Source of the DNA: Utricularia gibba
Taxonomy: Eukaryota > Plantae > Magnoliophyta
Length of the DNA: 64,000 nt
Assembly (NCBI GenBank): GCA_002189035.1
Contig: CM007990.1
Location: forward strand, 5,456,001-5,520,000
Direction of reading: 5' to 3'
Below, piece after piece: positions 1 through 25,356 of this stretch. The notes under the pieces are model-generated. The model was not told where the DNA came from and searched no databases. It worked only from the letters and a program-made list of their open reading frames with translations. A program made the translations under genes and the position numbers. Position 1 is the first letter of the stretch. Each line of letters begins with the position of its first letter.

Positions 1-3000
1 GCAGGATCCAACCTTGACTGGCGGCTAATGCGATAATCAATTTTATTGTATCCAGACGAGCTACCGGTGCGAAAGTCTCCCAGTAGTCTATACCTTCCTT
101 TTGAAGATATCCTTTTGCAACCAGCCTAGACTTTAACTTATTTACTGAGCCGTCTGGATTTAGCTTTGTGCGATAAATCCATTTTAATCCCAACGGTTTA
201 ATATTGAGAGGTTTATCCACCGCTGTCCACACTTGATGCTCTGCTATGGCCTGTAACTCATTATCCATTGAGGTTTTCCATGCAGGATCATTGAGAGCTT
301 CGAAGGGAGAGGTAGGTTCACAAATCATAAGCGATCTGTCATAGACTTCAGTAAGAGGACAGTAACCTCTAGCAGGCTCTTCATCTATGAGATGATCGGC
401 TGACTGCAGCATAAAGTGATGTGTATAGGAATTGTAGTTGTTTGCTGAATCTTCTGAGATATTTTCTGTGTTATCATGTCTTTCAGATATAATTTGCTCA
501 GAGTTTTGGAAGTGAGATGTATTTTCCTCCTGTTCTTGTAATGAAGAGAATTGATATTCTGATTCTCTGCTTTCTCCATGTTGAGGCTGTTGCGACGAAG
601 TAGGATATGGCATATGATCATTACTTTGCATGTCTTGATTCCTTTCTGAGTGATGTCTGAAATAATTGTTGTCCTCTGTTTCTGCACCAACAAGATTGGA
701 ATTATTCGTAATAGTGGTATTAGTTTCAGGAAGTTCATTGACAAGATTCTCTTCGTGCATTTCAGTAAGATTTTCAGATGCATTGATAGGAAATAGGAGT
801 TGCATGTCTCTGGAATATTCAGCTTCGTTTTCAGGAGTAGAAGAGATATTATGCCAGTCATAGGTCAGACTTTCTTCAACCACAACATCAGCACATCTTT
901 GAACTTCTATACATTGTTTGGATGGAATAAATATTCTGTAAATTTGAGAGGAGTCCGAATATCCCATAAAGACCCCCATTTGAGCATGATTCTCTAACTT
1001 TCTGCGTTTTTCTTTAGATATATGGACATAGCAGAGGGATCCGAAGATTTTCAGATTCTGTAGATCTGGGACTTTTCCATACCACAGTTCATGTGGAGTT
1101 TTTCCTTCAGGTATTCCTTTGGTGGGAAGTCGATTTAATAGGAATACCGCTGTGTTAACAGCTTCTCCCCAAAAGCGCAATGGTAAGTTGTGTTCCAATA
1201 ACAAGCAACGAGCCATATTCATAATCGTTTGATTTTTCCTTTCACAAACACCATTTTGTTGAGGGGTATATGGAACGGTAAACCGATGAACTATACCACT
1301 TGCATTGCAGATGTCTCGGAGTTCGGATGATTTGTATTCCCCGCCATTGTCTGAATGCAAAGTAAGTATTCTACAATTGCTTTGTAATTCTGCCATCATC
1401 TTGAACTGCTTGAAGTATTTAGTCACTTCAGACTTTTGCTTAAGAAAATATACCCACATATGCTTGGTGTAGTCATCAATAAATAGGACATAGAATTTCT
1501 TTCCACCAGGTGTCTCAACATGCATAGGTCCGCATACGTCAGAGACTACTAGCTGTAGTTTAGAGTCGGATACTTCAGTACGATTCTTGAATGGCTTCTT
1601 GTGCATTTTCCCAAATAGACAGGTGCTGCACGGGAAATTCCAGTCCTTTAATTGAGGTACGCCATGTATAACTCCTTGGGTTTGCGCTGTTCTGAGTTGG
1701 CTTGCATGATAGTGACCTAATCTTTTGTGCCATAGGAAAGAGGTATTTACAGCTGCAAGACAGAAATTACTATTAGTTGTCATGCAGTTAACTGGAAAGA
1801 GGCGATTTACCATGGGCACTTTTAGTACAATATTGTGAGCATAATCCTTCAACAAGCACATATTGTTCTCTATATTCAACTCATATCCACATTCTGCTAG
1901 TTGTCCTGCACTCAGTAAGTTGTGAGAAGCCTTTGGTACATAGAATACATTAGTAATCTTGATGAGTTTTTGTTCAGTTTCCAGACAGATTGATCCAACA
2001 CCTTCAACTGCAATGAGCGTTCCATCAGCAATGGTGAGAGTTTTTCCTGATATTGGGGTATATGTTGTGAATATAGACTTGTTGTTGGTCAAGTGATTAC
2101 TGCAGGCGCAATCAATGAACCAGATTGTGTTGTGTCGTAGATCAGTGAAATCAGAGAGAGTAGTCTTGCTGCACAAGATATAAACTGAAGACTTCACTTT
2201 CATATTTGAATCATCAGGAGATACATGAATTGATTTGTTTTTTGAATGTTCAGAAGATGCAGCAACAACATAAGTAGAGGCATATGATTTCTTGGTGGGA
2301 CACACACGCTCCACATGGCCTTTGGTTGAACAGATTGCGCAATGAGCCTCAGGATGCCAAAAACAGTTCGTTGGAATGTGGTTTTTCTGTGCGCAATATG
2401 GGCAAGGAGGATGTGGCCCCTTTTTCTCTTTCTTGACAGGTAGGAAACTTGGTGCAGAATATTGTTGTGTCCCATTTTCTCCTTTAGGACCTGCTATAGT
2501 AAGTGATGCTTTGAAGGCAGCTTCTAATAGATTTTCTTCATTGCGAGATTTACGTCTGCTGTCCACATTTTTGAAGTGTTGGAGCAGTTGCTGCAGACTC
2601 AGAGTTTCTAGAAATCCGGTTGCTTCCAAGGATTCAACGACAGCATCATAATCTGCCGGAGCACTATGAATGATCCTGGCCTTAAGCTTGCGCTCTTCAC
2701 GGGAGTCAACTTCTTCTCCAAGGCGCTTTAGTTTTTCCAGGTTTTTGAGAAGTTGTTCTGCATTGGTGGCTACCTCGCCATCTCTAATTTTGAAGTTGTA
2801 AACTTCATTCCATAGTTTCTGTATCTCCCTGTGCTTGTCTTCCTTTGTTTCTTCAAAGGTTTTCTCGGGCATAAGCCACGCCTCTCTTGGAGACCTTCGA
2901 GTTATACACCTGTAAGCATCTCCAACCACTGCTGTGGCTAGCACAGCTGCAGCCTGAATTTCTTTGTCTCTATAAGCTTTTTCAGCTGCAGTTTTTTCTT

Positions 3001-3139
3001 CAGGTGTTCCTTCAAAAACTGGATCAGTGGCTATTATTTTCCAGAGCCCATGAAGTTGGAGATATATCTCCATTTTTGGCGCCCAAATATCGTATTCCTT
3101 TCCGTCAAAAATGGGAGGTAATATGTTTGTTACAGACAT
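1..3139 (-). mobile_element. Ty1/Copia retrotransposon gag-pol ORF (gag, zinc knuckle, protease, integrase, start of RT), running off the left edge
   Basis: Manual translation from ATG 3139: MSVTNILPPIFDGKEYDIWAPKME (Copia gag N-term); CPYCAQKNHIPTNC knuckle (~2365-2410); WFIDCACSNHLT protease (~2085-2125); LWHKRLGH; integrase SDVCGP, SDNGGEY, YTPQQNGVCERKN (~1220-1550); RT KSRLVAKGY and GIDYWETFAPVARLDT (~50-140). Gag start, knuckle and RT were checked to share one frame. Domain order PR-INT-RT is Copia-type. Confidence 0.97.
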
Positions 3140-3253
3140 GATGACACTCTTTTGAGAACCTGCGATAGAATATAGAGTAAGGTAAGAAGCCTTTAGATGT
3201 AGTGTTTGAGTGGCAAACCGTGTTTGGAAGGATAGCAATGTTGAGCTGCTTGT

Positions 3254-3271
3254 TTCACGTCGGGTTCACCA
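3254..3271 (-). other. Primer-binding site complementary to the 3' end of plant tRNA-Trp(CCA)
   Basis: Minus strand TGGTGAACCCGACGTGAA directly follows ...CTATCA. The plus strand TTCACGTCGGGTTCACCA matches my recollection of the plant tRNA-Trp 3' end including CCA. Confidence 0.85.
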
Positions 3272-3660
3272 TGATAGCAGTTTATATCGATGTGTGAGGG
3301 TTGTAGAACAGATATTTTTATTAATGTTATGCAAGAGTACACATATTTATAGTTCTTTAGCAACGGTCGCCTACTTCTAGGGATTAGCCGTTGCTCACTA
3401 CGACTTCCAACAATATTGACTTCAGCACGTTGGGCCATATCATCATGTTGGGCCATTTTCTTGAAGTGGATGAGTAGCAAGATCTTTGTTGGTGGCCCAT
3501 CTTCTGATCTTGCTGTCCAGTATAATCAGTCCGAGTTGCTGACAGACCTTCTTCTTCTTCCTCCCGTTATCTCTCAACACATTCGTATTTTCCTGTTCTG
3601 GGTCCTCCACATTTCTCACAGTTTGCTGCTGGTTTATCTCATATTCGTCCTCACTCGACA
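3272..3660 (-). mobile_element. 5' LTR of the Copia element (3' end at 3272 firm; 5' end uncertain: 3412, 3442, 3579 or 3660)
   Basis: Ends in CA immediately before the PBS. Contains CTATAAAT (3345-3352), AATAAA (3317-3322) and an 8-bp inverted repeat AGCAACGG/CCGTTGCT (3359-3395). Candidate TG starts: TGTTGG 3412, TGATA 3442, TGTTGA 3579, TGTCGA 3660. Confidence 0.7.
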
Positions 3661-6600
3661 TCACCGTTGTGGATCGTCGTGGAGCGGGAATGGGTGCGAG
3701 CCTGGAAGCAGCTGCCTCCGGATCATATTTCACTAGTCCCAGCTCCCTGGAAGCTTGATGACCGTTGCCGTTGCTGCTCCCGTCGTCCCACTGCTGAGCG
3801 CGGAAGCGTCCCGGCGTCCCTGGAGAGCCATTGGCGTTCGCGTCGCTGCGGTGTTGGTCTCGGAGGAGGTGGACGGGGGACATCTGTCCGTGCAGCGGCG
3901 TCCCTGGCCGGCTCGACATGGGTGTCGCCGGGCCGGAGCCCTTGGTGTGCTTGATGTTCTTCTTGGCGGTATGGTGCCAGTTCCTCAACGCGGTGGCGAC
4001 TCTCTCGTTGAATATCGTGGGCTTCATATTCGACCCCATCTGCAACCACAGGCACAACCTTAATCTCTGCATCCTCCCCCACAACCACAAACAACGAAGA
4101 AAACATCAGGTAATCAATCACTCGTACCTGAGTAACCAGGGCGTAGAGCGGGAGAGTGACGTAGCTGCAGAGTATCTGGATAAGAACCCTAATGCAGACA
4201 ACTCCCATGTTAAGCTAAGCTAGCTATAGATATAGGAAGAAGAATGACTCTCTCTGCGTGAAACAACGCTTCTTAGTTCTTACCCCATGGTGATTCTGAT
4301 CACAATATCTTCAACATGTCGATGGAAACATGACTTCAGCCCGAATTCATACTGCGAAAAACCGGAGAATATTCGGATCAAGAATATCGAAATCGCATAG
4401 GCATTGTCTCATTTTGATCAAGGCTTACCCAACTCCAAGCGAAGAACGCAAGTTGAAAGGCGTTCTGCCAAAAGAAAGGGGAAATTTTTATGGTTGTAAT
4501 AATATATTTGAATATTTTGGTTATTATTATTTGGGAAAATTAATACCTGGAAAAGAACGAAGTTTATGAGATAGAGAATGAGCCGGGGGCGGTTGAACCA
4601 GAAAAGGTCGTCTCCCGGTTCAACAACGGGTGCGCCTTTTACCACTTCGCCCCTCTCCTGAATCCGGAGCCCCATTTTCGTAATTATCACTTGCAGCTTC
4701 GTCCCGATTAATAAGATTATCTGAATAAAATAAATGTATCATATATTTTCCCTCTTTTTTTAAAAAAAAAAAGAAGAATAATTACCATCAATGGAATGAA
4801 CGGCAACCATAGATAGGAGTACCACCCTGAAAACCAAAAACTCAATAAGAATGTAACGGAAAAGTCCATTATACCCTTGGAGGAGTGGAGGACGTACCGT
4901 GTGTGTTAAATAGTAAAAAGAGCACCGCAAATAGCCAAATTGGAGGACTGAAATTAAAAAAAAAAAAAAATTGATTAAATTATTTATTGATAATATATTT
5001 TATTTTATTTTAAAAAAAATCTGAAAAAGAAACCTAACCTTATCCCAACAACCACTTTGAAATCTTCTTCAAGTGATCGGTTTATGTACTTCTGGAAATC
5101 AAAGCTTGCGTGGCTATGTGGGGCCAGATGTGCCTAGTAACAAAAAAAACAGATATTTTTCCTGAAATCATTTTTTAAAAAAAAAAAGAAAAAGGAAAAT
5201 GAATACTATATAATATTTTTTTACCGTAATAAATCCATGTCTCAATGTCAAGTAGTCAACCCTCGGTACGGATCTCACAAATTGCCTAAAAAAACAAACC
5301 TACCACATAAAAAAGGATGGTCACATAATGCTTAGTAACTAATTTCTAAAATAAATAAATTTTATAGATGGTAAAATAAAAATTTGACGACAAATTAAAA
5401 TATAATATACGTAAATCTATCTATCCAACACATTTTAAATATAGAAATTAACTTCAATTTTAAACGAGCGAACAAACGTGCGCTTAGGGTTATTAGGGGG
5501 GTAGAAAAAGATTAACTGGGGATGTGAATGTAATTAAGGAGATACGGTGAAGATAATGAAGAGTAGGGTAAAAAAAGAATTGGTTTCGTGAGTAGGGAGG
5601 TCCAGAGTTCAAAAGTCAGCAATGACTGCATTAATATACCTTAATTCAACTAAAGATCGGGTCTTGATCTCTATAATTTAGACATATAAAATAATGATAC
5701 TAAAATCATTATCAATATTGCCACTCACACTAAGTACACCTGCGCACTGGATTTAATTGTGTGTTGTAGAAAAAGGATGTGTTTGTGAAATAAAGTAATG
5801 GGTGTTGTTGTGGAGTTGAAGTGGAAGCTTACGATCCAGAGGAGAGCCGGGTTTGTGCTCCAGAAGCTCAGGTGCCTTCGCCCGAATGAGGTGTCCCTTG
5901 CGAACCGGAATCTCTCGGGATCTGCATCACAGGGGGGGTTCATTTGATGAGTTTGGTGGGGTGTGGGGATTGATGAGAAGGGTTTCGGGTTACCATGTGA
6001 GAACTGGTACTCGGCGGTTCTGGTTTCCTCTTCCCAAATCTTCCAGCTTCTCATCTGCAGGCAGTGGATGAATTAGGGTTTTTGGGTGATTAGGGGGAGT
6101 GGGAGGAGTATGGGATTCTTACCTTTAACCGGCCCAATGCGAGGGTGAGAATACAGTAGAGAATATGGAAAACGGCTAAAACGAAGATGAAGATGTGGAG
6201 CTGGTGAATCCCATCTGATGACACGAAGGGAACCAGACCCTGCAGTTTTCACTTTCTTTTAACAAAAAAAAATGTACATGTGTGATAATTTGAGGTTTAT
6301 TAGGGTAGGGTGTTCTTGCCTTGCTTGCGCATTTGTCTTCTCCGGCGGGAGCGAGCATCCGTCGGAAAACGGTGTCTTCCGCAGTGAAGAGGAGCCTCCG
6401 GTGGTGGTCCGATGGATACTTGGCCGTCTCCTGGCTCTTGGTGCATGGATGCCAAGTTGATGCCAGGGATTTGGGTATGCAGATTTCGGCGATTATTCCT
6501 TGGCCCACAGTCAGCATAAGGGATATGAACCCCAGCAACATCAGCTCTGCGGAAACCACAATTTTCCACCTCATGAAGTATATACAGAAAACAATTAAAT

Positions 6601-6873
6601 CTCGCACTTACCGGATTTCACCTTTTCGAGAGACTCATACAGAGCCTTCTTGTTCTTTTTCTTCAGCCACTGTACTGACGCCGACAGACAACTTGAGCGC
6701 AAAACCAAAAAAAAAAAGGGAGGAACAAACCAAAGGAGATCGGTACGGACCTTTCCGATCAAGTGGATGATGTGTTCGATGAAAATCGATATCGCAACCA
6801 AAACGAAGCACACAACCGCAACGGCCCATGTGGGAGTTTCCTCCAGCGACCGACCTCCGCCGCCTCCAGCCAT
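3443..6873 (-). CDS. MLO: MLO seven-transmembrane protein, clade V-like (AtMLO2/6/12 type), 15 exons
   Basis: Traced exons: [23 protein letters not shown]; [19 protein letters not shown]; [16 protein letters not shown]; [23 protein letters not shown]; [22 protein letters not shown]; [19 protein letters not shown]; [11 protein letters not shown]; CaM-binding [18 protein letters not shown]; clade V-like [18 protein letters not shown]. Confidence 0.95.
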
Positions 6874-7040
6874 TGATCAACTCTTCCGGCGGCTGTGAAC
6901 GCCTCTCCCAGGTCCAGTCGAAACCGAAGGAAAACTTGTCCAGGGGGAGGAAGGGGGTGATCGATTTTAGGGGAAACAAGTAGCTGAGCCTGAGAAGACA
7001 GAGGCTAAAATGGGCATTTAAATAAAATCCGTGGAAGACT

Positions 7041-10327: not shown

Positions 10328-12941
10328 ATGGCTGCCGGAAGCCACGGGGGCGGTCGTTCCTTGGAAATCACTCCCACGTGGGCTCTCGCTGCGGTCTTGT
10401 TCGTTTTCATTTCGATTGGGCTTTTCATCGAACACTTGATCCACCTCGCGTCGCATGTAAGATTTAATGGTTCGTCTTCTACTGTGGGTTTATGTGACGA
10501 TTCCACGGAGTAAACTTTGTTTCTGGGGCGGTGTAGTGGTTGAAGAAGCACAAGAAAGCGTCACTCTGCGGAGCTCTGGAAAAGCTGGAGTCCTGTACGT
10601 TGAGTGCTGCTGCTGTTACCTTGGTTTCTTCATTTCTTTTCTTTTCTGGGTTTGGTTAATTTTGGCGCTGGTGCAGTGCTGATGCAGCTCGGATTCATGT
10701 CCTTGATTCTAACTGTCACACAACCCGAAGTTTCAAAGATCTGTATACCATATAAAGCTGCAAACTTCATGCTCCCCTGCCAACAGACTTCCACTGATCA
10801 TCTACCGGCTTCTGCTGCGCTTGATCACTGTTCGTTGAAGGTATGCAGGCTGCTCTGTTTTTGAGTGCTCTGTTTTCATCTGAAGTTGTACGAAGACAAT
10901 GCCTTCAATTCATTGACAGGGAATGGTTCCAGTGATCTCAGCAGACGGAGTCAATCAGCTAAACATTTTTATATTTGTGCTTGCCGCTATGCAGGTTGTG
11001 TATAGCTTAACCACACTGGCTTTGGCAAGAGCTAAGGTTCATTAATGGCCTTAATGATTACATTAGTAACTTCTAACAATACTTAACATAATCTGTAATT
11101 TCTGTGAAGATTAAGACATGGAAAGCCTGGGAAGAGGAGACGCAGACTGTGGAGTACATGGTGGCAAATGGTGAGTCACTTCTCTTGAATGGTTTTTTTT
11201 TTTTCCAGAAGGTTTCATCAATGACTTGGTGAAAGACTAATAATGGAATGACTAACGTACTATTTACTCATCACTCTTCTATGTGAAAACAAAAGATCCT
11301 GAAAGATTTCGAGTCACCAGAACGACGACATTCTCGCAACGCCATGCTGCGACCTGTGCCTCGACTCCGGCTCTACTTTGGGCGGTATGAGCATCTTGTT
11401 GGTGGGGTAACGTCATTCAGTTATTGCTTACATAATTTCATTCTACGTGCAGAAGTGCTTTTTCCGGCAGTTTTTCCGATCCGTGGCCAAAGTCGACTAC
11501 CTCACGCTCCGCCACGGCTTCATTTCGGTTCGTTGGTTCGTGTACGGACTTGTTATTCCGCGACCAGACTAACGAAATCTTTGTACGGTGCAGGCTCACT
11601 TACAAGGCAACAACACGTACAATTTTCAGAGGTACATAACCCGGTCCTTGGAAGACGATTTCAAATCCCTGATCGGGATAAGGTAATCTTTTTTATACAG
11701 AGAATCCATGATACATTTGCAGATGCTGAATGGGCCTTTTCTCCGTTGTGGGCAGGCCGGTAATGTGGCTGATGGTAGTTATATTCATGCTGGTTGATGT
11801 TCACGGTAAACAAATAGTAACAAGTATTGCTGAGACTCAAATTATTGACCTCATTGGGAGAATTAATTTGATTTTTCTTTGTTGTTTGCATGATGATAGG
11901 ATGGAATGTGTACCTCTGGGTGTCATTTGTACCCTTAATCGTAAGTCGATCTGCTGATCACTTCTTTGCAAGTATGCATATGCAAGTTGGGTTGTATTTG
12001 CGATTGATTATCAGGATTCATCCTTTTGAGAAGCGATCAAGAATCGATTTTGAGAATCAGGGCCTTTGATGCAGATCGCGTTGGTTGTTGGGACGAAGCT
12101 GGAAGCGATAATGGGGAGAATGGCAATGACACTGACGGATGAAAAGAGTGTGATCAAAGGAGCCATCGTGGTGCACCCCGACGACCACCTGTTCTGGTTC
12201 GATAGTCCCCGCCTGGTCTTGACACTGCTCCACTTCATTCTCATCATGGTACTCCTCTTCCCACTCGTGCACGCAGTGTCATCCTACTATCACGCAGCAC
12301 TCATCCCAACTCCGTTTCTGTCTTTCTACACGCAGAATTCGTTCGAGTTCTCGTTCTTTATCTGGGTCTCGGTAAGCAGCTCCCGCATTCCCAATTTTAA
12401 GGATCTGCCGTTCTCAAACATTCATTCTGATGGTTTGCAGTGGCAATTTGGGATAAATTCGTGCTACCAACAAAACGTTGGCACAATTGTTACAAGGCTG
12501 GTGCTGGTGTAAGTCGCATGGTTTATTCATCTACCAATCCATTTTGTATACATATGATTTGGTTTTAATACTCAACTCGATCCACCCAAAGTGTGGTGGT
12601 TCAAGTCCTTTGCAGTTACATAACACTGCCTCTGTACGCTCTCGTCACTCAGGTACATGCATGCACTACCCAAATTAGAACCAGGAGTGTTCGATTAGCT
12701 TGCTAATGTATCTTCGCAGATGGGGTCTGAGTATAAGATGTCATTACTGGAAGAGGACATCAAGGAGACGATAAAACACTGGCACCAGGGCGTGAAACAC
12801 AAGAGGAAAAGAGGATTAGGCGAAGAAGGAGAAGAAGAAGAGGGGTCTTCCCATTCATGGAGAGGCGCATTGCCTGCAAGATCTCCTCCCTTTACAGCCA
12901 CCACAAACGTGGCATCTTCTTCCCATCCAGGGGAACCCTAA
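10328..12941 (+). CDS. MLO: MLO protein, MLO3/clade VI-like, 15 exons
   Basis: [23 protein letters not shown]; [12 protein letters not shown]; [22 protein letters not shown]; [10 protein letters not shown]; [11 protein letters not shown]; last exon [26 protein letters not shown] resembles AtMLO3 as I recall it. GT-AG junctions traced in frame. Confidence 0.9.
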
Positions 12942-13767
12942 TCCACACACTCAACACCGAAGGTGTCTTCACGACAAACAAGTCATTAGGTTCCTTACTG
13001 TAAGATATAATCTTTTTCCGAGTAGCTATAAAACCCACAAACCACAGCTTAAAATCCAACAAATCGATCTACTTTTTTTATGGGTTTTTTTAGTAGAAGG
13101 TTTCGCAGAACCAAGCGGTAAAAGGGTGCCATTTGGCGTATTGAATCTGGTGTAGGGAGATAGGGACACGAGCGGGATGAGTAGTTCATGGGGGAAGGGA
13201 AAGCGAGGTCTCAGCAGAAGAATAATCAAATCAGCGAGCACGGGGGACAGCTCTGCAAATAATATAAAAAACGGGGGGGCCGAGGCCCCGAATCACAGCG
13301 ACACTTCAGTAGCGGGGCCCACATTAAAAATGAACATGTCGGCCCCCATTGGTGGATGCAAATATCATCCATTAAATTCAGCCACCCTAAACGCAATATT
13401 TTACTCATTATTTTAAAAATAAATAAATAAAATAATCGGATTATTAAATTCATTATAATGTCTAATGAGATTTGTGTCGCCTGTGGGCCGATCCATATAA
13501 CCACTAAAAAAGCGACGTATCGTTTCATGTATAAAGGTGATACGTGTGTCTGAGATTCCAATATTGCCCTTTGCCCACCCAGGTTGTCCACGAGGCTGCT
13601 GGGGTATATCCGACTTTGATTTACCAAGATCGAATCCGGGAGCATGAAGGGTAAGAAATGGACAAGTGTGATGGGTTATGACATATCATGTCGTGGATCA
13701 ACACACTGCCATTGCACATGCAAGAAGACGACCCCAACCCCATCTTCTTTCCCTTTCCCCAGTCGAC

Positions 13768-21209: not shown

Positions 21210-21486
21210 TATTATAAATATATTATGAAAATAAAATAATTATTTAATTTTTTTAATATTATTAAAATCGAATCCAAAAAATCATTAATTTAGATCAAAC
21301 AACATGGAATCTCAAATTCAGTTCTAATATTTATCTAATAAAATCAAAACAATTTTATTAATTTCAATGTAGAATTGAATTATATCGCTCAATCCCCATA
21401 GCATAATATATTATAATGGAAATAATCAATATTTTTATATATATTATAATATTAAACAACGTACTCTAAATATTTTTTTCTTATAG

Positions 21487-21518
<32 letters not shown>

Positions 21519-22689
21519 TTTTATAAAATTTGTTTAATAGAAATGTATTTGTATGTTTTAAGTATAATATAATTATATATATATATTCAATTATATGTAG
21601 CGTTTGAATTTTAATATATGAAAATAAAAATTTAAATATATGATTGATATAAATATAATTAACTCTATTCTTCATTTATATACATATCACTTAGGGGTAG
21701 TTTGATATGAAAGTATTAGTATATTAAAGTATAGTATAATTAAGTGTGTATATATATTCACTTGTAAATTACGTTTGATATGAAAAATAAAAGTTTGAGT
21801 ATATAACTAAACCCCTCCTCCATTTTTATATATCATCCATATATTCAAAAAATGAGTATATCAATAATATAACTATATAAAATTAGTATATGTATATTAA
21901 TCAATCAAAAAATGATATATATATATATATAAACTTAGATATAAATCTTCTATACTCTCTTATCAAACAATACTTATATATTCAAAAAATAAGTATATAA
22001 ATAATATAATCATATAAAATTAATATACACATATTGGCTTATTAAATAATAATTTATATGTAAATTTTGATATAAATTTTTTATATTATAATATCAAACA
22101 TATTATAATAATATTCGAACTAGAAGAACCACCTTATATCACCATGTATTCACTTGTCTAGCTTCATTTTCATCAACTTATCCACGATGGCATCGTTCCT
22201 CTGAGTTGTGCGCGTGGCCGCAACTTCCTCGCACTCCTTGTCATGCAAACGTACCCTGGAAGTCCTCACCGGCTCCTTGCTCGACTCCACATCGACTTGC
22301 TGACGAGCATCACTCGGCTCCGCATTGACCTGCTGATGAGCGTTGCTCGACTCCGCATCATCCTGTTGACGAGCATTGCAGATGAATTTTAGAAGGCTGT
22401 AGAACTTTTCTAGTTCGTCTTGAGCGACACGCTCCTTCTCCATGAAATCTCTCATTGCACAGGATGGATAATAATATGCAATTATTCTTCAATGTGCTCG
22501 ATATTTATAGTTGAAATCATCTTTGTGACATGATGTATTCACTCAATGCTATGTTGATATATTAATATAATATTATTGATTTTTTCCATCAATATTAATG
22601 TAATATAATTTCAATCAATTATAATAATATGATTTCATTATTCGTAAAATATGATTTTAAATTATAAGTATGATCAAATTGTGACAAAA
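21210..22689. repeat. Copy 1 of a ~1.45-kb AT-rich direct duplication
   Basis: Aligns by eye along its length with 23277-24714 (shared start TATTATAAATATATTATGAAAATA, shared end ATCAAATTGTGACAAAA); contains (TA)n tracts. Confidence 0.9.
22150..22455 (-). CDS. Orphan small ORF (97-101 aa) with three 11-aa repeats; function unknown
   Basis: MRDFMEKERVAQDELEKF...ARQQDDAESSN AHQQVNAEPSD ARQQVDVESSK...KLMKMKLDK; a GC-rich island in very AT-rich DNA; homologous ORF in copy 2. Confidence 0.45.
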   Translation of the reverse strand: MRDFMEKERVAQDELEKFYSLLKFICNARQQDDAESSNAHQQVNAEPSDARQQVDVESSKEPVRTSRVRLHDKECEEVAATRTTQRNDAIVDKLMKMKLDK

Positions 22690-23276
22690 GGACTATGAGC
22701 GAAGGATTTTTGCTTCTGAGGAAACTGAGTGTGGATTATTGAATCGGAGTCTGAAATCAAGTACCTATATGGATAAAAGAAATAAAATAAGACCATGATT
22801 TTTATGTGAAAACCATCGTAACAAAAAAACCACAGAGTTGAGGTAGCTTATCGAAGAAATGAGTTTCATTAAAGAAAAGGGAGAAGAGTTACAAGTGATC
22901 TGTAAAAAGTTTAATCCCTTTTTCTTTGAACATCTCCATTTAGAGGAGAAGTCATCTCGATCGAATACTACTAATGTCAAATGCTTTCTACGCTTGACGT
23001 CTATATATGTGATCCTGGTTACAAATAATAGTCGACTGCACTGAGGACTTTGCAATTAAGTTACTTTTCATGTTCTTTTGGAACAATCATCACCATTCTA
23101 CTCTAATCCTTGACATTCCACCCATGTGTTACACACTGTCATAAACCATTTTCCTCTTCCCCAATTGATATCATCTAAAAAGTGTTGATTTTGGTATCCC
23201 ATCGCTTACCTATTTGTAAGTATCTCCTATGATCAATTCTACTTGACACTTACTGATTTAACGTCCCCATCAAATT

Positions 23277-23558
23277 TATTATAAATATATTATGAAAATA
23301 AAAATAATTATATAATTTTTTAAATATTACTAAAATCACATCCAAAAAATCATGAATTTAGGTCAAACAACATGAAATCTAAAATTCAATTCTATCTTTA
23401 TCCAATAAAACGAAAACAGTTGTATTAATTTGAATATGAAATTGAATTATATTGCTCAATCCGCATAACATAGCATATTATAGAGGAAATAATCAACATT
23501 TTTATCTATATTGTAAGATTAAAAAAATGTTATCTAAATATTTCCTTGTTATGGTATA

Positions 23559-23596
<38 letters not shown>

Positions 23597-24714
23597 GTGC
23601 ATTTTTATAAAATATTATTTGACATAAGTGTATTTATGTGTTTTAAATATAATGTAATTAGATATGAATATATTCAATTATATATATAACATTTGAATTT
23701 TGATATATGAGATCATAAATTTAAGTGTATAAGTGATATAAATATAATTAACTTCATCTTCAATTTGTGTATATCACTTAGAAGTCGTTTGATAGCAAGA
23801 TATTAGTATATTTAAGTATAGTGTAATTAAATAGATATATATTCAATTATAGATAACGTCTAATATACGAAAATAGAAATTTAAATATATAAACGATATA
23901 CATAAAAGTAATTACTTCCTTCATTTATATATATCACCCATATACTCAAAAAATGAGTATGTTAATGATATAGCTATATTAAGTTAGTATATGTATATTA
24001 ATCAATGAAACAATGATATATGTGTAAACTTAGGTATAGAACTTCTATATTCTCTTATTAAACAATTCTTTACATATTCAAAAAATAAGTATATAAATGA
24101 TATAATTATAAAAGATTAATATGCATATATTAGTTTATTAAAAAAATAATTATTATGTAAATTTGAATATAATTTTTTTATATTATAATCAAACATATTA
24201 TAATAATACTCGAACTAGAATAACCACATTGTGTCATACTATATTTACTTGTCTAGCTTCATTTTCATTAATTGATCCATGACGGCACCATTCCTCTAGG
24301 TGGTGAGCGTGGCGGCCACCTTCTCGCACTCCTTCGCGAGCGAACGGATCCTGGAAGTCCTCGCCGGGTCCTTGCTTGGCTCCGCATCAACCTGCTGGCG
24401 AGCATTGCGGAAAAACTGCAGAAGGCCGTCAAACTTTTCTAGTTCATCTTGAGCAGCACGCACCTCCTCCATGAAATCTCCGATTGCAAAGTATGAATGA
24501 TGACAAGTAGTTTTCTTTAATGTGCTGTATATTTATAGCTAAAATCATCTTTATGGCATGTTGTGTTCACCCAATATTATGTGGATATTAATGTAATATT
24601 ATTGACTTTTTTTCATCAATAATAATGTAATATATTTAAATAAATTATAATAATATGATTTCATGATTTTAAAATTATATTTTAAAATACAAATATTATC
24701 AAATTGTGACAAAA
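23277..24714. repeat. Copy 2 of the AT-rich duplication
   Basis: See copy 1; offset ~2.05 kb, with a ~590-bp unrelated spacer. Confidence 0.9.
24245..24472 (-). pseudogene. Paralog of the orphan ORF with a premature TAG
   Basis: MEEVRAAQDELEKFDGLLQFFRNARQQVDAEPSKDPARTSRIRSLAKECEKVAATLTT*RNGAVMDQLMKMKLDK*; CAG in copy 1 is TAG at 24296-24298; only one repeat unit (66-nt in-frame difference). Confidence 0.55.
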
Positions 24715-25356
24715 CGTCTACCAATGAAGGTCATGTCATTTGTTTGTGGGAAACTATGTTTTATTAGGCTGGGGCCCGAAATCAGTTTAGCTCAGGCCCA
24801 TTAGTTGCCGAGATATTTTTGGCCCAAAGTAGAAGATATAAATATTTTTGGACAGAGGCGCGGAAAGAAGGCAGTTCAATTTTACCTCGAAGCGACGGTT
24901 GTTGCGCGAAGAGAAATTGGACTGGGAGCAGTGTTGATCGGACATAGTTCTATAGTCCTTTCATTTGGTGTTTCCGTTCTGGTGTGGAGACGCGGAGGTA
25001 AATCTGCGCTATTTTTGAAGGATCAGGATTCGAGACTCTGTTGTTTTTCTGTTGTAAGCATGATGTTTCTCTGCTCGTTACGAGTTTTTCTTGCTTTTTT
25101 TTGTTAGTCCGCAGGTGGTTCGTGAAGCTGTAGTATGCATTCTCGTTACGAGTTTTTTTTCTTGCTTCTTAAATTCTCGGTTTCTTCTTTTGATCTTGTT
25201 TCTGTTGTAATCGTTGTTGCTCAATGAGTTTCTGTAGACTGTGAAAATTCTTGTGATAATAGAACGTTCGGATTCCTAATATTATGAACTGTCGATTGAA
25301 TTTGGCGTTGAATCTCATCTTTCTACCTAGTTTTTGAGCATAGAAACATCCGAAGG

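What the first reader, a model, noticed from the sequence alone, without database searches (positions are those of the whole stretch)
3272..3800. Copia LTR sits on the 3' end of a clade V (powdery-mildew susceptibility type) MLO and may have replaced its C-terminus
Seen: the MLO stop (3443) lies only ~170 bp from the LTR/PBS junction, in the same orientation. The MLO tail runs ...APRRSTTVM then [12 protein letters not shown]...ENGPT with no terminal D/E-F-S/T-F motif. Canonical LTR starts occur inside the reading frame (TGTCGA at 3660, TGTTGA at 3579), and a repeated ATGGCCCAAC straddles the stop codon. Known: clade V MLOs are powdery-mildew susceptibility factors and normally end in that motif, and TE insertions in clade V MLOs have produced resistance alleles (cucumber CsaMLO8). 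Inference: this is a natural allele with intact TM and CaM-binding regions but up to ~72 LTR-derived C-terminal residues, possibly hypomorphic.
Basis: partly seen in the sequence, partly recalled or inferred. Interest (0 to 1): 0.85.

Follow-up and report, generated by a model that had tools for sequence, protein, structure and literature searches.

The report
Copia LTR replaces MLO protein tail
A young Copia retrotransposon has landed inside the last exon of a mildew-susceptibility-type (clade V) MLO gene of a Lamiales plant. The gene is still transcribed, but its conserved tail end is replaced by 73 residues read from the transposon's LTR, and the uninterrupted allele still exists in another sample.

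Summary

- **LTR boundary.** The 5' LTR is window 3663..3272 on the minus strand (392 bp, TGAT...ATCA), not a 140-170 bp LTR lying after the stop. An independent copy of the element in a public contig (L001), next to an unrelated multicopper-oxidase exon, matches the window from exactly 3663 (99.6%). Contigs of three runs also break at 3663 with different flanks.
- **Effect on the protein.** The 15-exon, 623-aa MLO is native up to residue 550 (...APRRSTT). Codon 551 is a hybrid, and residues 552-623 plus the stop come from the LTR. The 3' UTR does too, and probably the AATAAA signal.
- **No MLO carries this tail.** Among 1.84 billion representative proteins, the only match to the tail is the LTR copy in L001.
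- **Empty site.** One DNA run has a contig that continues ...STT-DHEIRIVDNS, the clade V HEI motif that precedes [DE]FSF. The insertion is therefore polymorphic and removes about the last 20-25 native residues.
- **Transcription.** A spliced 1760-nt RNA contig from another study runs from the 5' UTR to 30 nt inside the LTR with no mismatch, so the chimeric mRNA is made.
- **Not tested.** The functional effect (hypomorph or neutral) is unknown.

This is a new member of a known kind (TE alleles of MLO) and of moderate interest.

The parts
3443..6873 (-). Clade V-type MLO gene: CDS of 15 exons, 623 aa in this allele (ATG 6873-6871, stop TGA 3445-3443). Exons: 6873-6751, 6669-6612, 6546-6319, 6238-6123, 6054-5994, 5921-5831, 5297-5224, 5132-5039, 4947-4897, 4825-4786, 4720-4547, 4464-4429, 4351-4283, 4187-4128, 4039-3443.
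   Evidence: The joints of the spliced RNA contig X6 record 21 fix 13 of the 14 introns, the 4948-5038 choice lying within one. The interval 4721-4785 comes from a GT-AG and frame search with a single solution. Translation has no internal stop and is 67.6% identical over 522 aa to the full-length MLO P0010. Pfam Mlo hit.
3664..4039 (-). Native part of the last exon, residues 426-550: [23 protein letters not shown]... (CaM-binding region) to ...[11 protein letters not shown], plus the first base of codon 551.
   Evidence: Homology to other MLO tails ends at or before this point in nearly all hits: the query ranges of MLO hits stop at residue 130 of 198 or earlier, with one weak hit reaching 150. 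GC content is 0.6-0.7 here and drops to 0.43-0.47 beyond about 3655.
3664..3668 (-). Predicted 5-bp target-site duplication AACGG, immediately upstream of the 5' LTR.
   Evidence: Inferred from the boundary at 3663/3664. The second copy would lie beyond the 3' LTR, outside the window, so it was not seen.
3272..3663 (-). 5' LTR of the Copia element: 392 bp, TGATGTCG...GCTATCA, with a 4-bp terminal inverted repeat.
   Evidence: L001:341-1033 matches window 3663..2969 at 99.6%, with a different upstream flank. X2 has a 390-nt contig covering exactly 3272-3663. Loose ends with varied flanks lie just beyond 3663 in X2, X5 and X6.
3446..3663 (-). LTR-derived coding sequence: two bases of codon 551 (Val) plus 72 codons, [13 protein letters not shown]...HPLQENGPT.
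   Evidence: P0001 (72 aa, 100% identical) is encoded in the LTR copy of L001. No other protein among 1.84 billion representatives matches it.
3443..3445 (-). Stop codon TGA used by the chimeric ORF; it lies inside the LTR.
3344..3351 (-). TATAAATA in the LTR, its putative own promoter.
   Evidence: Motif position only.
3317..3322 (-). AATAAA in the LTR, the likely poly(A) signal used by the chimeric MLO mRNA.
   Evidence: Motif position. RNA contigs of X6 cover 3307-3663 but have no depth over 2400-3169. Contigs cannot prove an RNA end.
3255..3271 (-). Primer-binding site TGGTGAACCCGACGTGA.
   Evidence: It directly follows the LTR's terminal CA. Its complementarity to the 3' end of plant tRNA-Trp is recalled from memory and agrees with scan notes; it was not tested here.
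2..3139 (-). Copia gag-protease-integrase-RT ORF, open for 1046 codons to the window's edge.
   Evidence: Translation. Pfam hits, in order: Retrotran_gag_2, Pol_BBD, gag_pre-integrs, rve, SH3_retrovirus, RVT_2.

Best explanation
A young, probably autonomous Ty1/copia element integrated in the sense orientation into the last exon of a clade V-type MLO gene, between window bases 3664 and 3663.

Transcription from the MLO promoter runs through all 15 exons and on into the 5' LTR. By chance the MLO frame meets the only LTR frame that is open, so translation continues for 72 LTR codons to a TGA inside the LTR. The mRNA probably ends at the LTR's own AATAAA signal.

The product keeps the seven-TM core, the calmodulin-binding region and most of the disordered tail. 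Its last 20-25 or so native residues, which hold the clade V HEI motif and presumably [DE]FSF, are replaced by 73 unrelated residues.

The uninterrupted allele is still present in at least one other sample, so the insertion is recent and segregating.

Shown here: the boundary, the chimeric ORF, the empty-site sequence and the chimeric transcript. Inferred: the poly(A) site, the length of the lost native tail, and any change in protein function.
For: - **Boundary.** L001, a Logan contig from another run, shares 695 nt at 99.6% with window 3663..2969. Upstream of that it carries a multicopper-oxidase (LPR1-like) exon instead of MLO.
- **Boundary, from runs.** In X2 a 390-nt contig spans exactly 3272-3663 at depth 51, against 21 for the element's interior and 2-5 for MLO. 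In X2, X5 and X6, contigs that match the LTR go on beyond 3663 with different flanks.
- **Tail is foreign.** The only hit to residues 127-198 of the last-exon query is P0001, from L001. All MLO hits stop aligning at residue 130 or earlier, bar one weak hit to 150, and they end in ...EI.I...[DE]FSF.
- **Empty site.** An X2 contig matches from 3664 upward and continues with at least 255 non-LTR letters. Read in the MLO frame, they give ...RRSTT DHEIRIVDNS and a next codon starting with G. Kusch et al. 2016 (PMC4824068) list QHEI as a clade V motif and [DE]FSF as a motif of clades III-V.
- **Both alleles in X2.** The X2 MLO contig breaks exactly at 3664, which is what a branch between two alleles in a k=31 graph would give.
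- **Transcript.** X6 record 21 has its introns removed and runs from 6952 to 3634 with no mismatch. That is exactly k-1 = 30 nt into the LTR.
- **Intact gene.** The model gives 623 aa with no internal stop.
- **Young element.** The ORF is open for 1046 codons and the element is 99.6% identical to another copy.
Against: - The 3' LTR and the second copy of the TSD lie outside the window and were not seen.
- All read evidence comes from assembled contigs, not raw reads. The RNA contig overlaps the LTR by 30 nt, one short of the tool's own criterion of 31 for bridging a place.
- Only 30 letters of the empty-site contig were shown, so the native [DE]FSF was not actually read.
- The presence of the filled allele in X2 is inferred from a contig break at low depth (2-5).
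- No protein-level or phenotype data exist.
Confidence: 0.88

Rival explanations
1. The element inserted at or just after the native MLO stop (LTR only 3272-3442 or 3272-3412). On this view the ...[12 protein letters not shown]...ENGPT tail is native and merely lacks the FSF motif.
For: TGATA at 3442 would give a neat 5-bp inverted repeat with the LTR end TATCA. TGTTGG at 3412 looks like a classic Copia LTR start.
Against: An independent copy, and the repeat contigs of three runs, share the sequence all the way to 3663. No MLO carries this tail. The empty-site contig diverges at 3664, not at 3442.
Confidence: 0.02
2. The MLO-LTR junction is an assembly artefact, in which a repeat was wrongly joined to the MLO exon.
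For: The LTR is multi-copy and the junction sits at a repeat edge, a typical site for misjoins.
Against: A spliced RNA contig from a different study (X6) carries the same junction with 30 nt of LTR and no mismatch. The X2 graph branches exactly at 3664, with an alternative that encodes a canonical clade V tail.
Confidence: 0.03
3. The reverse direction: the Copia family captured the 3' end of this MLO gene into its LTR, so the tail is native MLO sequence that has since been spread by the element.
For: The LTR carries an unusually long ORF from its third base: 72 codons, reached by only 0.9% of shuffles.
Against: The 72 residues resemble no MLO or any other protein. GC content drops sharply at the boundary. 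The empty allele continues with the expected HEI motif instead.
Confidence: 0.02
4. The structure is as in the best explanation, but the swap is functionally neutral. The distal tail is disordered and fast-evolving, and the chimeric protein works like the wild type.
For: MLO C-termini are intrinsically disordered, highly variable and under diversifying selection (PMC4824068). The TM core and CaM-binding region are untouched. The allele is expressed and appears to be the only form in the X6 RNA.
Against: [DE]FSF is conserved across clades III-V, and QHEI within clade V, which implies constraint. The C-terminus of AtMLO2 determines where and when the protein acts (PMC13360292). 73 foreign residues, including a hydrophobic LGLIIL stretch and a KKKK run, could disturb trafficking or stability.
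Confidence: 0.4

Closest known systems
CsaMLO8 transposon allele of cucumber (Berg et al. 2015, PMC4600303)
   Same: An LTR retrotransposon with very young LTRs sits in an exon of a clade V MLO. It is a natural allele that segregates in germplasm.
   Different: The cucumber element is a 1449-bp non-autonomous element with no ORF, in exon 11. It causes aberrant splicing (72- and 174-bp deletions) and loss of function. Here the element is coding (a 1046-codon ORF running to the window edge) and sits in the last exon. No splicing change is seen, and only the distal tail is exchanged.
Pea er1 allele with an Ogre LTR retrotransposon in PsMLO1 (as cited in PMC4600303)
   Same: An LTR retrotransposon insertion in a clade V MLO susceptibility gene.
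   Different: The pea insertion leads to aberrant splicing and resistance. It involves a different element superfamily (Ogre, Ty3/gypsy; from my own knowledge) and a different position.
LTR-terminated chimeric transcripts in general (a host gene reading into an LTR and using its poly(A) signal)
   Same: The host promoter drives a transcript that ends in the U3-R part of a sense-oriented LTR. In the RNA contigs the LTR is covered but the element's interior is not.
   Different: This general phenomenon is recalled from my own knowledge, not tested against a specific case. Here the LTR also contributes 72 in-frame codons, because its only open frame matches the insertion phase.
AtMLO2 / AtMLO6 / AtMLO12-type (clade V) MLO proteins
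   Same: A 15-exon gene, the Mlo Pfam domain, a CaM-binding region [23 protein letters not shown], and an S/T/P-rich tail. The best named hits are 'MLO-like protein 6/12/2' and potato MLO1. The empty allele carries the HEI motif.
   Different: The allele in the window lacks the HEI and [DE]FSF end. AtMLO2 ends ...RDFSFKK and barley Mlo ends ...ADFSFSQG.

Membership tests
MLO family (Pfam PF03094) | Mlo domain with a seven-TM core and a proximal C-terminal calmodulin-binding region | tested here: met
   Pfam Mlo hit on the last exon, E = 6e-15. The full model of 623 aa aligns over residues 8-524 at 67.6% identity to the 572-aa MLO P0010.
MLO clade V (AtMLO2/6/12 type) | Groups with AtMLO2/6/12-type proteins rather than other clades | tested here: inconclusive
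   The best named hits are 'MLO-like protein 6', '12', '2' and potato MLO1. No tree with labelled clade references was built.
MLO clade V (AtMLO2/6/12 type) | Clade V motif QHEI in the distal tail (Kusch et al. 2016) | tested here: met
   It is absent from the allele in the window. The empty-site contig reads DHEIRI directly after the insertion point; the motif definition comes from PMC4824068.
MLO clade V (AtMLO2/6/12 type) | C-terminal [DE]F[ST]F tetrapeptide | tested here: not met
   It is absent from the 623-aa product. In the empty allele only 10 residues beyond the site were visible. The next codon starts with G, which is compatible with D or E but unproven.
Ty1/copia LTR retrotransposon | Domain order gag - protease - integrase - reverse transcriptase | tested here: met
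   Pfam hits run in this order along the ORF: Retrotran_gag_2 23-200, Pol_BBD 340-419, gag_pre-integrs 447-512, rve 528-626, SH3_retrovirus 687-759, RVT_2 969-1045.
Ty1/copia LTR retrotransposon | LTR with TG...CA ends, followed directly by a tRNA-complementary PBS starting with TGG | tested here: met
   The LTR starts TGATG and ends TATCA. The PBS TGGTGAACCCGACGTGA abuts it. The tRNA identity (Trp) is from memory and scan notes only.
Ty1/copia LTR retrotransposon | Two LTRs flanked by a 5-bp target-site duplication | not testable with these tools
   The 3' LTR lies left of the window. The predicted TSD is AACGG.

The most novel reading that the evidence does not exclude
The chimeric allele is a naturally segregating, expressed variant of a clade V MLO that separates two parts of the protein. 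It keeps the TM/CaM-binding core but lacks the HEI and [DE]FSF end. It alters MLO trafficking or stability, giving a partial loss or a change of function. That would make it a ready-made natural test of what these conserved but unexplained tail motifs do.
Probability: 0.3. Interest if true: 0.6.

Novelty: new member of a known kind. Interest (0 to 1): 0.4.

Why it matters
Retrotransposon alleles of clade V MLO genes are known sources of powdery-mildew resistance in cucumber and pea, but those alleles destroy the transcript. This one leaves the membrane core and calmodulin-binding site intact and swaps only the distal tail.

- **The motifs.** The swap removes the HEI and [DE]FSF motifs, which are conserved but whose function is unknown. 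Because filled and empty alleles both exist, comparing them could show what the distal tail does.
- **How an LTR can rebuild a gene's end.** Here a single LTR supplies coding sequence, a stop codon and a 3' UTR, and probably the poly(A) signal.
- **Limits.** The host is an unnamed Lamiales plant with a compact genome, possibly not a mildew host. No phenotype is known.

Tried and rejected
- **Second LTR in the window.** None of the repeat families found lies on the LTR, so the boundary had to come from outside data.
- **Close MLO orthologs with a native tail.** The best identity was 63% and the hits were asterid MLOs only. The window's own last-exon ORFs are not in the protein collection.
- **Full-length relatives of the Copia polyprotein**, sought to reach a 3' LTR. 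The best hit was 35% identical.
- **The rest of the empty-site sequence.** Two exact-pattern scans of metagenome contigs, one for the empty junction and one for the MLO side of the junction, were both blank.
- **Literature.** A search for the run accession of L001 found nothing. Searching Utricularia plus MLO returned one paper whose title shows no bearing on this gene; it was not read.
- **tRNA genes.** There are none in the window, so the PBS could not be checked against a local tRNA-Trp.
- **Host identification.** A Lentibulariaceae plant such as Utricularia is my guess, based on compact introns, genome size and the 2013 runs. It is not a result.
- **Rejected LTR starts.** TGATA at 3442, TGTTGG at 3412, TGTTGA at 3579 and TGTCGA at 3660.
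- **Rejected TSD.** ATGGCCCAAC is not a target-site duplication.

Full report
**What is in the window.**
- An MLO gene lies on the minus strand, with its ATG at 6873 and its stop TGA at 3445-3443.
- Directly downstream, in the same orientation, lies a Ty1/copia element.
- The element's LTR ends ...CTATCA at 3272. The primer-binding site TGGTGAACCCGACGTGA follows at 3271-3255.
- An ORF starting at 3139 stays open for 1046 codons to the window's left edge.
- Pfam shows the domains in Copia order: gag, protease barrel, integrase, reverse transcriptase. The last MLO exon hits Pfam Mlo.
- The window holds no second copy of the LTR, so the 5' boundary of the LTR had to be found from outside data.

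**Where the LTR starts.** A HMMER search with the last-exon product (198 aa) against 1.84 billion representative proteins gave one perfect hit: P0001, 72 aa, identical to residues 127-198 (MSSEDEY...ENGPT). All true MLO hits stopped aligning at residue 130 or earlier; one weak hit reached 150.

P0001 is encoded on a 1033-bp Logan contig, L001. L001:341-1033 matches window 3663..2969 at 99.6%. L001:1-340 is not MLO; it encodes a multicopper-oxidase (LPR1-like) fragment. So L001 holds an independent copy of the same element in a different gene, and the shared sequence begins at TGATGTCGAG, which is window 3663.

Contigs of four public runs laid on 2400-7000 agree with this:
- In X2, a 390-nt contig covers exactly 3272-3663 at depth 51. 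The element's interior has depth about 21 and the unique MLO sequence 2-5.
- In X2, X5 and X6, contigs that match the LTR run on beyond 3663 with different flanks.
- A diverged relative of the LTR (86% identical) also ends at 3663.

The LTR is therefore 392 bp, TGAT...ATCA, with GC 0.42. This fits the GC drop at about 3655.

**The gene and its chimeric product.** The joints of the spliced RNA contig X6 record 21 fix the introns. A GT-AG and frame search, which has a single solution, supplies one interval the joint table does not list and picks the other within one that it does. The gene has 15 exons and encodes 623 aa without an internal stop. It is 67.6% identical over 522 aa to the 572-aa MLO P0010.
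- Residues 1-550 are native, ending ...[11 protein letters not shown].
- Codon 551 is G|TG, with one host base and two LTR bases.
- Residues 552-623 and the stop come from the LTR.
- Only one of the three LTR frames is open. It runs for 72 codons from an ATG at LTR base 3; the other two frames stop after 0 and 3 codons.
- Only 0.9% of shuffles of the LTR reach an open run that long.
- In L001 the host frame meets the LTR's first three bases, TGA, and stops at once.

**The native tail and the empty site.** Other clade V-type tails continue after the A/V-P-x-P region with ...(Q/H)EIxI... and end in [DE]FSF plus a few basic residues. Examples are P0005 ...QQEISIGMPNKDFSFDKRTST, P0040 ...HEISISMSEFSFGKK and P0010 ...QHAINIRLSEFSFAKRK. 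AtMLO2 ends ...RDFSFKK and barley Mlo ends ...ADFSFSQG.

In run X2, one contig matches the window from 3664 upward and carries at least 255 other letters before it. The 30 letters shown, read in the MLO frame, give ...RRSTT-DHEIRIVDNS followed by a codon starting with G. Kusch et al. 2016 list QHEI as a clade V motif and [DE]FSF as a motif of clades III-V.

So the uninterrupted allele exists. The element cut the ORF just before the HEI motif, and roughly the last 20-25 native residues are displaced beyond the 3' LTR. That length is an inference from relatives.

The X2 contig on the MLO side is 417 nt long and starts exactly at 3664. In a k=31 graph that is the signature of a branch, so X2 most simply holds both alleles. 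The predicted target-site duplication is AACGG (3668-3664).

**Expression.** X6 record 21 is a 1760-nt contig that skips the introns. All listed joints are GT-AG on the minus strand except one, which reads as GC-AG. The contig runs from 6952 in the 5' UTR to 3634 with no mismatch.
- 3634 is exactly 30 nt (k-1) inside the LTR. That is where a unique junction path must stop before it merges into the repeat.
- There is no break at 3664 in X6, so only the chimeric form is evident there.
- X6 contigs cover the LTR from 3663 down to 3307 but give zero depth over 2400-3169.
- The LTR RNA in this run therefore comes from read-in transcripts, not from the element's own genomic RNA.
- TATAAATA lies at 3351-3344 and AATAAA at 3322-3317.
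- The chimeric mRNA thus probably ends about 3307, using the LTR's signal, with a 3' UTR of about 136 nt. Contigs cannot prove RNA ends, so this step is inferred.

**Age and host.**
- The element is young. Its ORF is open for 1046 codons, it is 99.6% identical to another copy, and the site is polymorphic.
- Its polyprotein has no close relative in the protein collection (35% at best).
- Scan notes report many tRNA-Trp-primed Copia elements in this genome. I did not verify those notes.
- Named hits to a neighbouring GH17 exon are all Lamiales at 75-81%.
- The MLO's best named hits are asterid 'MLO-like protein 6/12/2' and potato MLO1.
A compact-genome Lentibulariaceae plant is my guess only.

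**Function.** Nothing here measures function. In favour of an effect: the lost motifs are conserved, and the MLO2 C-terminus governs focal accumulation at the fungal entry site (PMC13360292). In favour of neutrality: the tail is disordered and fast-evolving, and the core and CaM-binding site are intact. I put altered function at roughly even odds.

**Comparison with known cases.** The closest are the cucumber CsaMLO8 allele, with a 1449-bp non-autonomous LTR element in exon 11 that causes aberrant splicing, and the pea PsMLO1 Ogre allele. This case is the same kind of event, an LTR retrotransposon in a clade V MLO exon that segregates naturally. It differs in that the element is coding, sits in the last exon, leaves splicing untouched, and yields an expressed protein with an LTR-encoded tail.

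**Verdict.** This is a new member of a known kind, and interest is moderate.

Noticed in passing
window 3446-3661 (-), the LTR's first 218 bases: The LTR carries a 72-codon ORF that starts with ATG at its third base; only 0.9% of shuffles are open that long. The peptide has no homolog among 1.84 billion representatives other than the L001 copy. A scan note on another piece of this genome (s1-273770) suggests a 'U3-encoded pol extension' in a tRNA-Trp-primed Copia. That could explain the ORF, but it needs the element's 3' end.
   Followed up: partly
L001:1-343: Another copy of the same Copia family abuts an LPR1-like multicopper-oxidase exon in a public run. There the host frame ends at the LTR's first three bases, TGA. 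This family seems to insert into exons repeatedly.
   Followed up: partly
window about 10340-13400 (+): A second MLO gene lies head-to-head with the first, about 3.5 kb away. Its N-terminus reads [23 protein letters not shown], and it has a short, different tail (...[13 protein letters not shown]...), so it probably belongs to another clade.
   Followed up: no
window 3255-3271 (-): The PBS begins TGGTGAACCCGACG rather than the usual Copia TGGTATCAGAGC (iMet). First readers flagged many tRNA-Trp-primed Copia elements in this genome. The tRNA match was not verified here.
   Followed up: no
window 5563-6995, run X5: A DNA run from another study carries a version of the 5' half of the MLO gene that is about 98.5% identical, with several indels. 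It is a divergent haplotype or accession, and its state at the insertion site was not visible.
   Followed up: no
window 6239-6318 (-): One MLO intron has non-GT ends in the RNA contig's joint. Shifted by one base, it reads as a GC-AG intron.
   Followed up: no
window 21210-24730: A roughly 2-kb AT-rich tandem duplication, with blocks 78-88% identical at a spacing of about 2030-2095. Another scan note already covers it.
   Followed up: no
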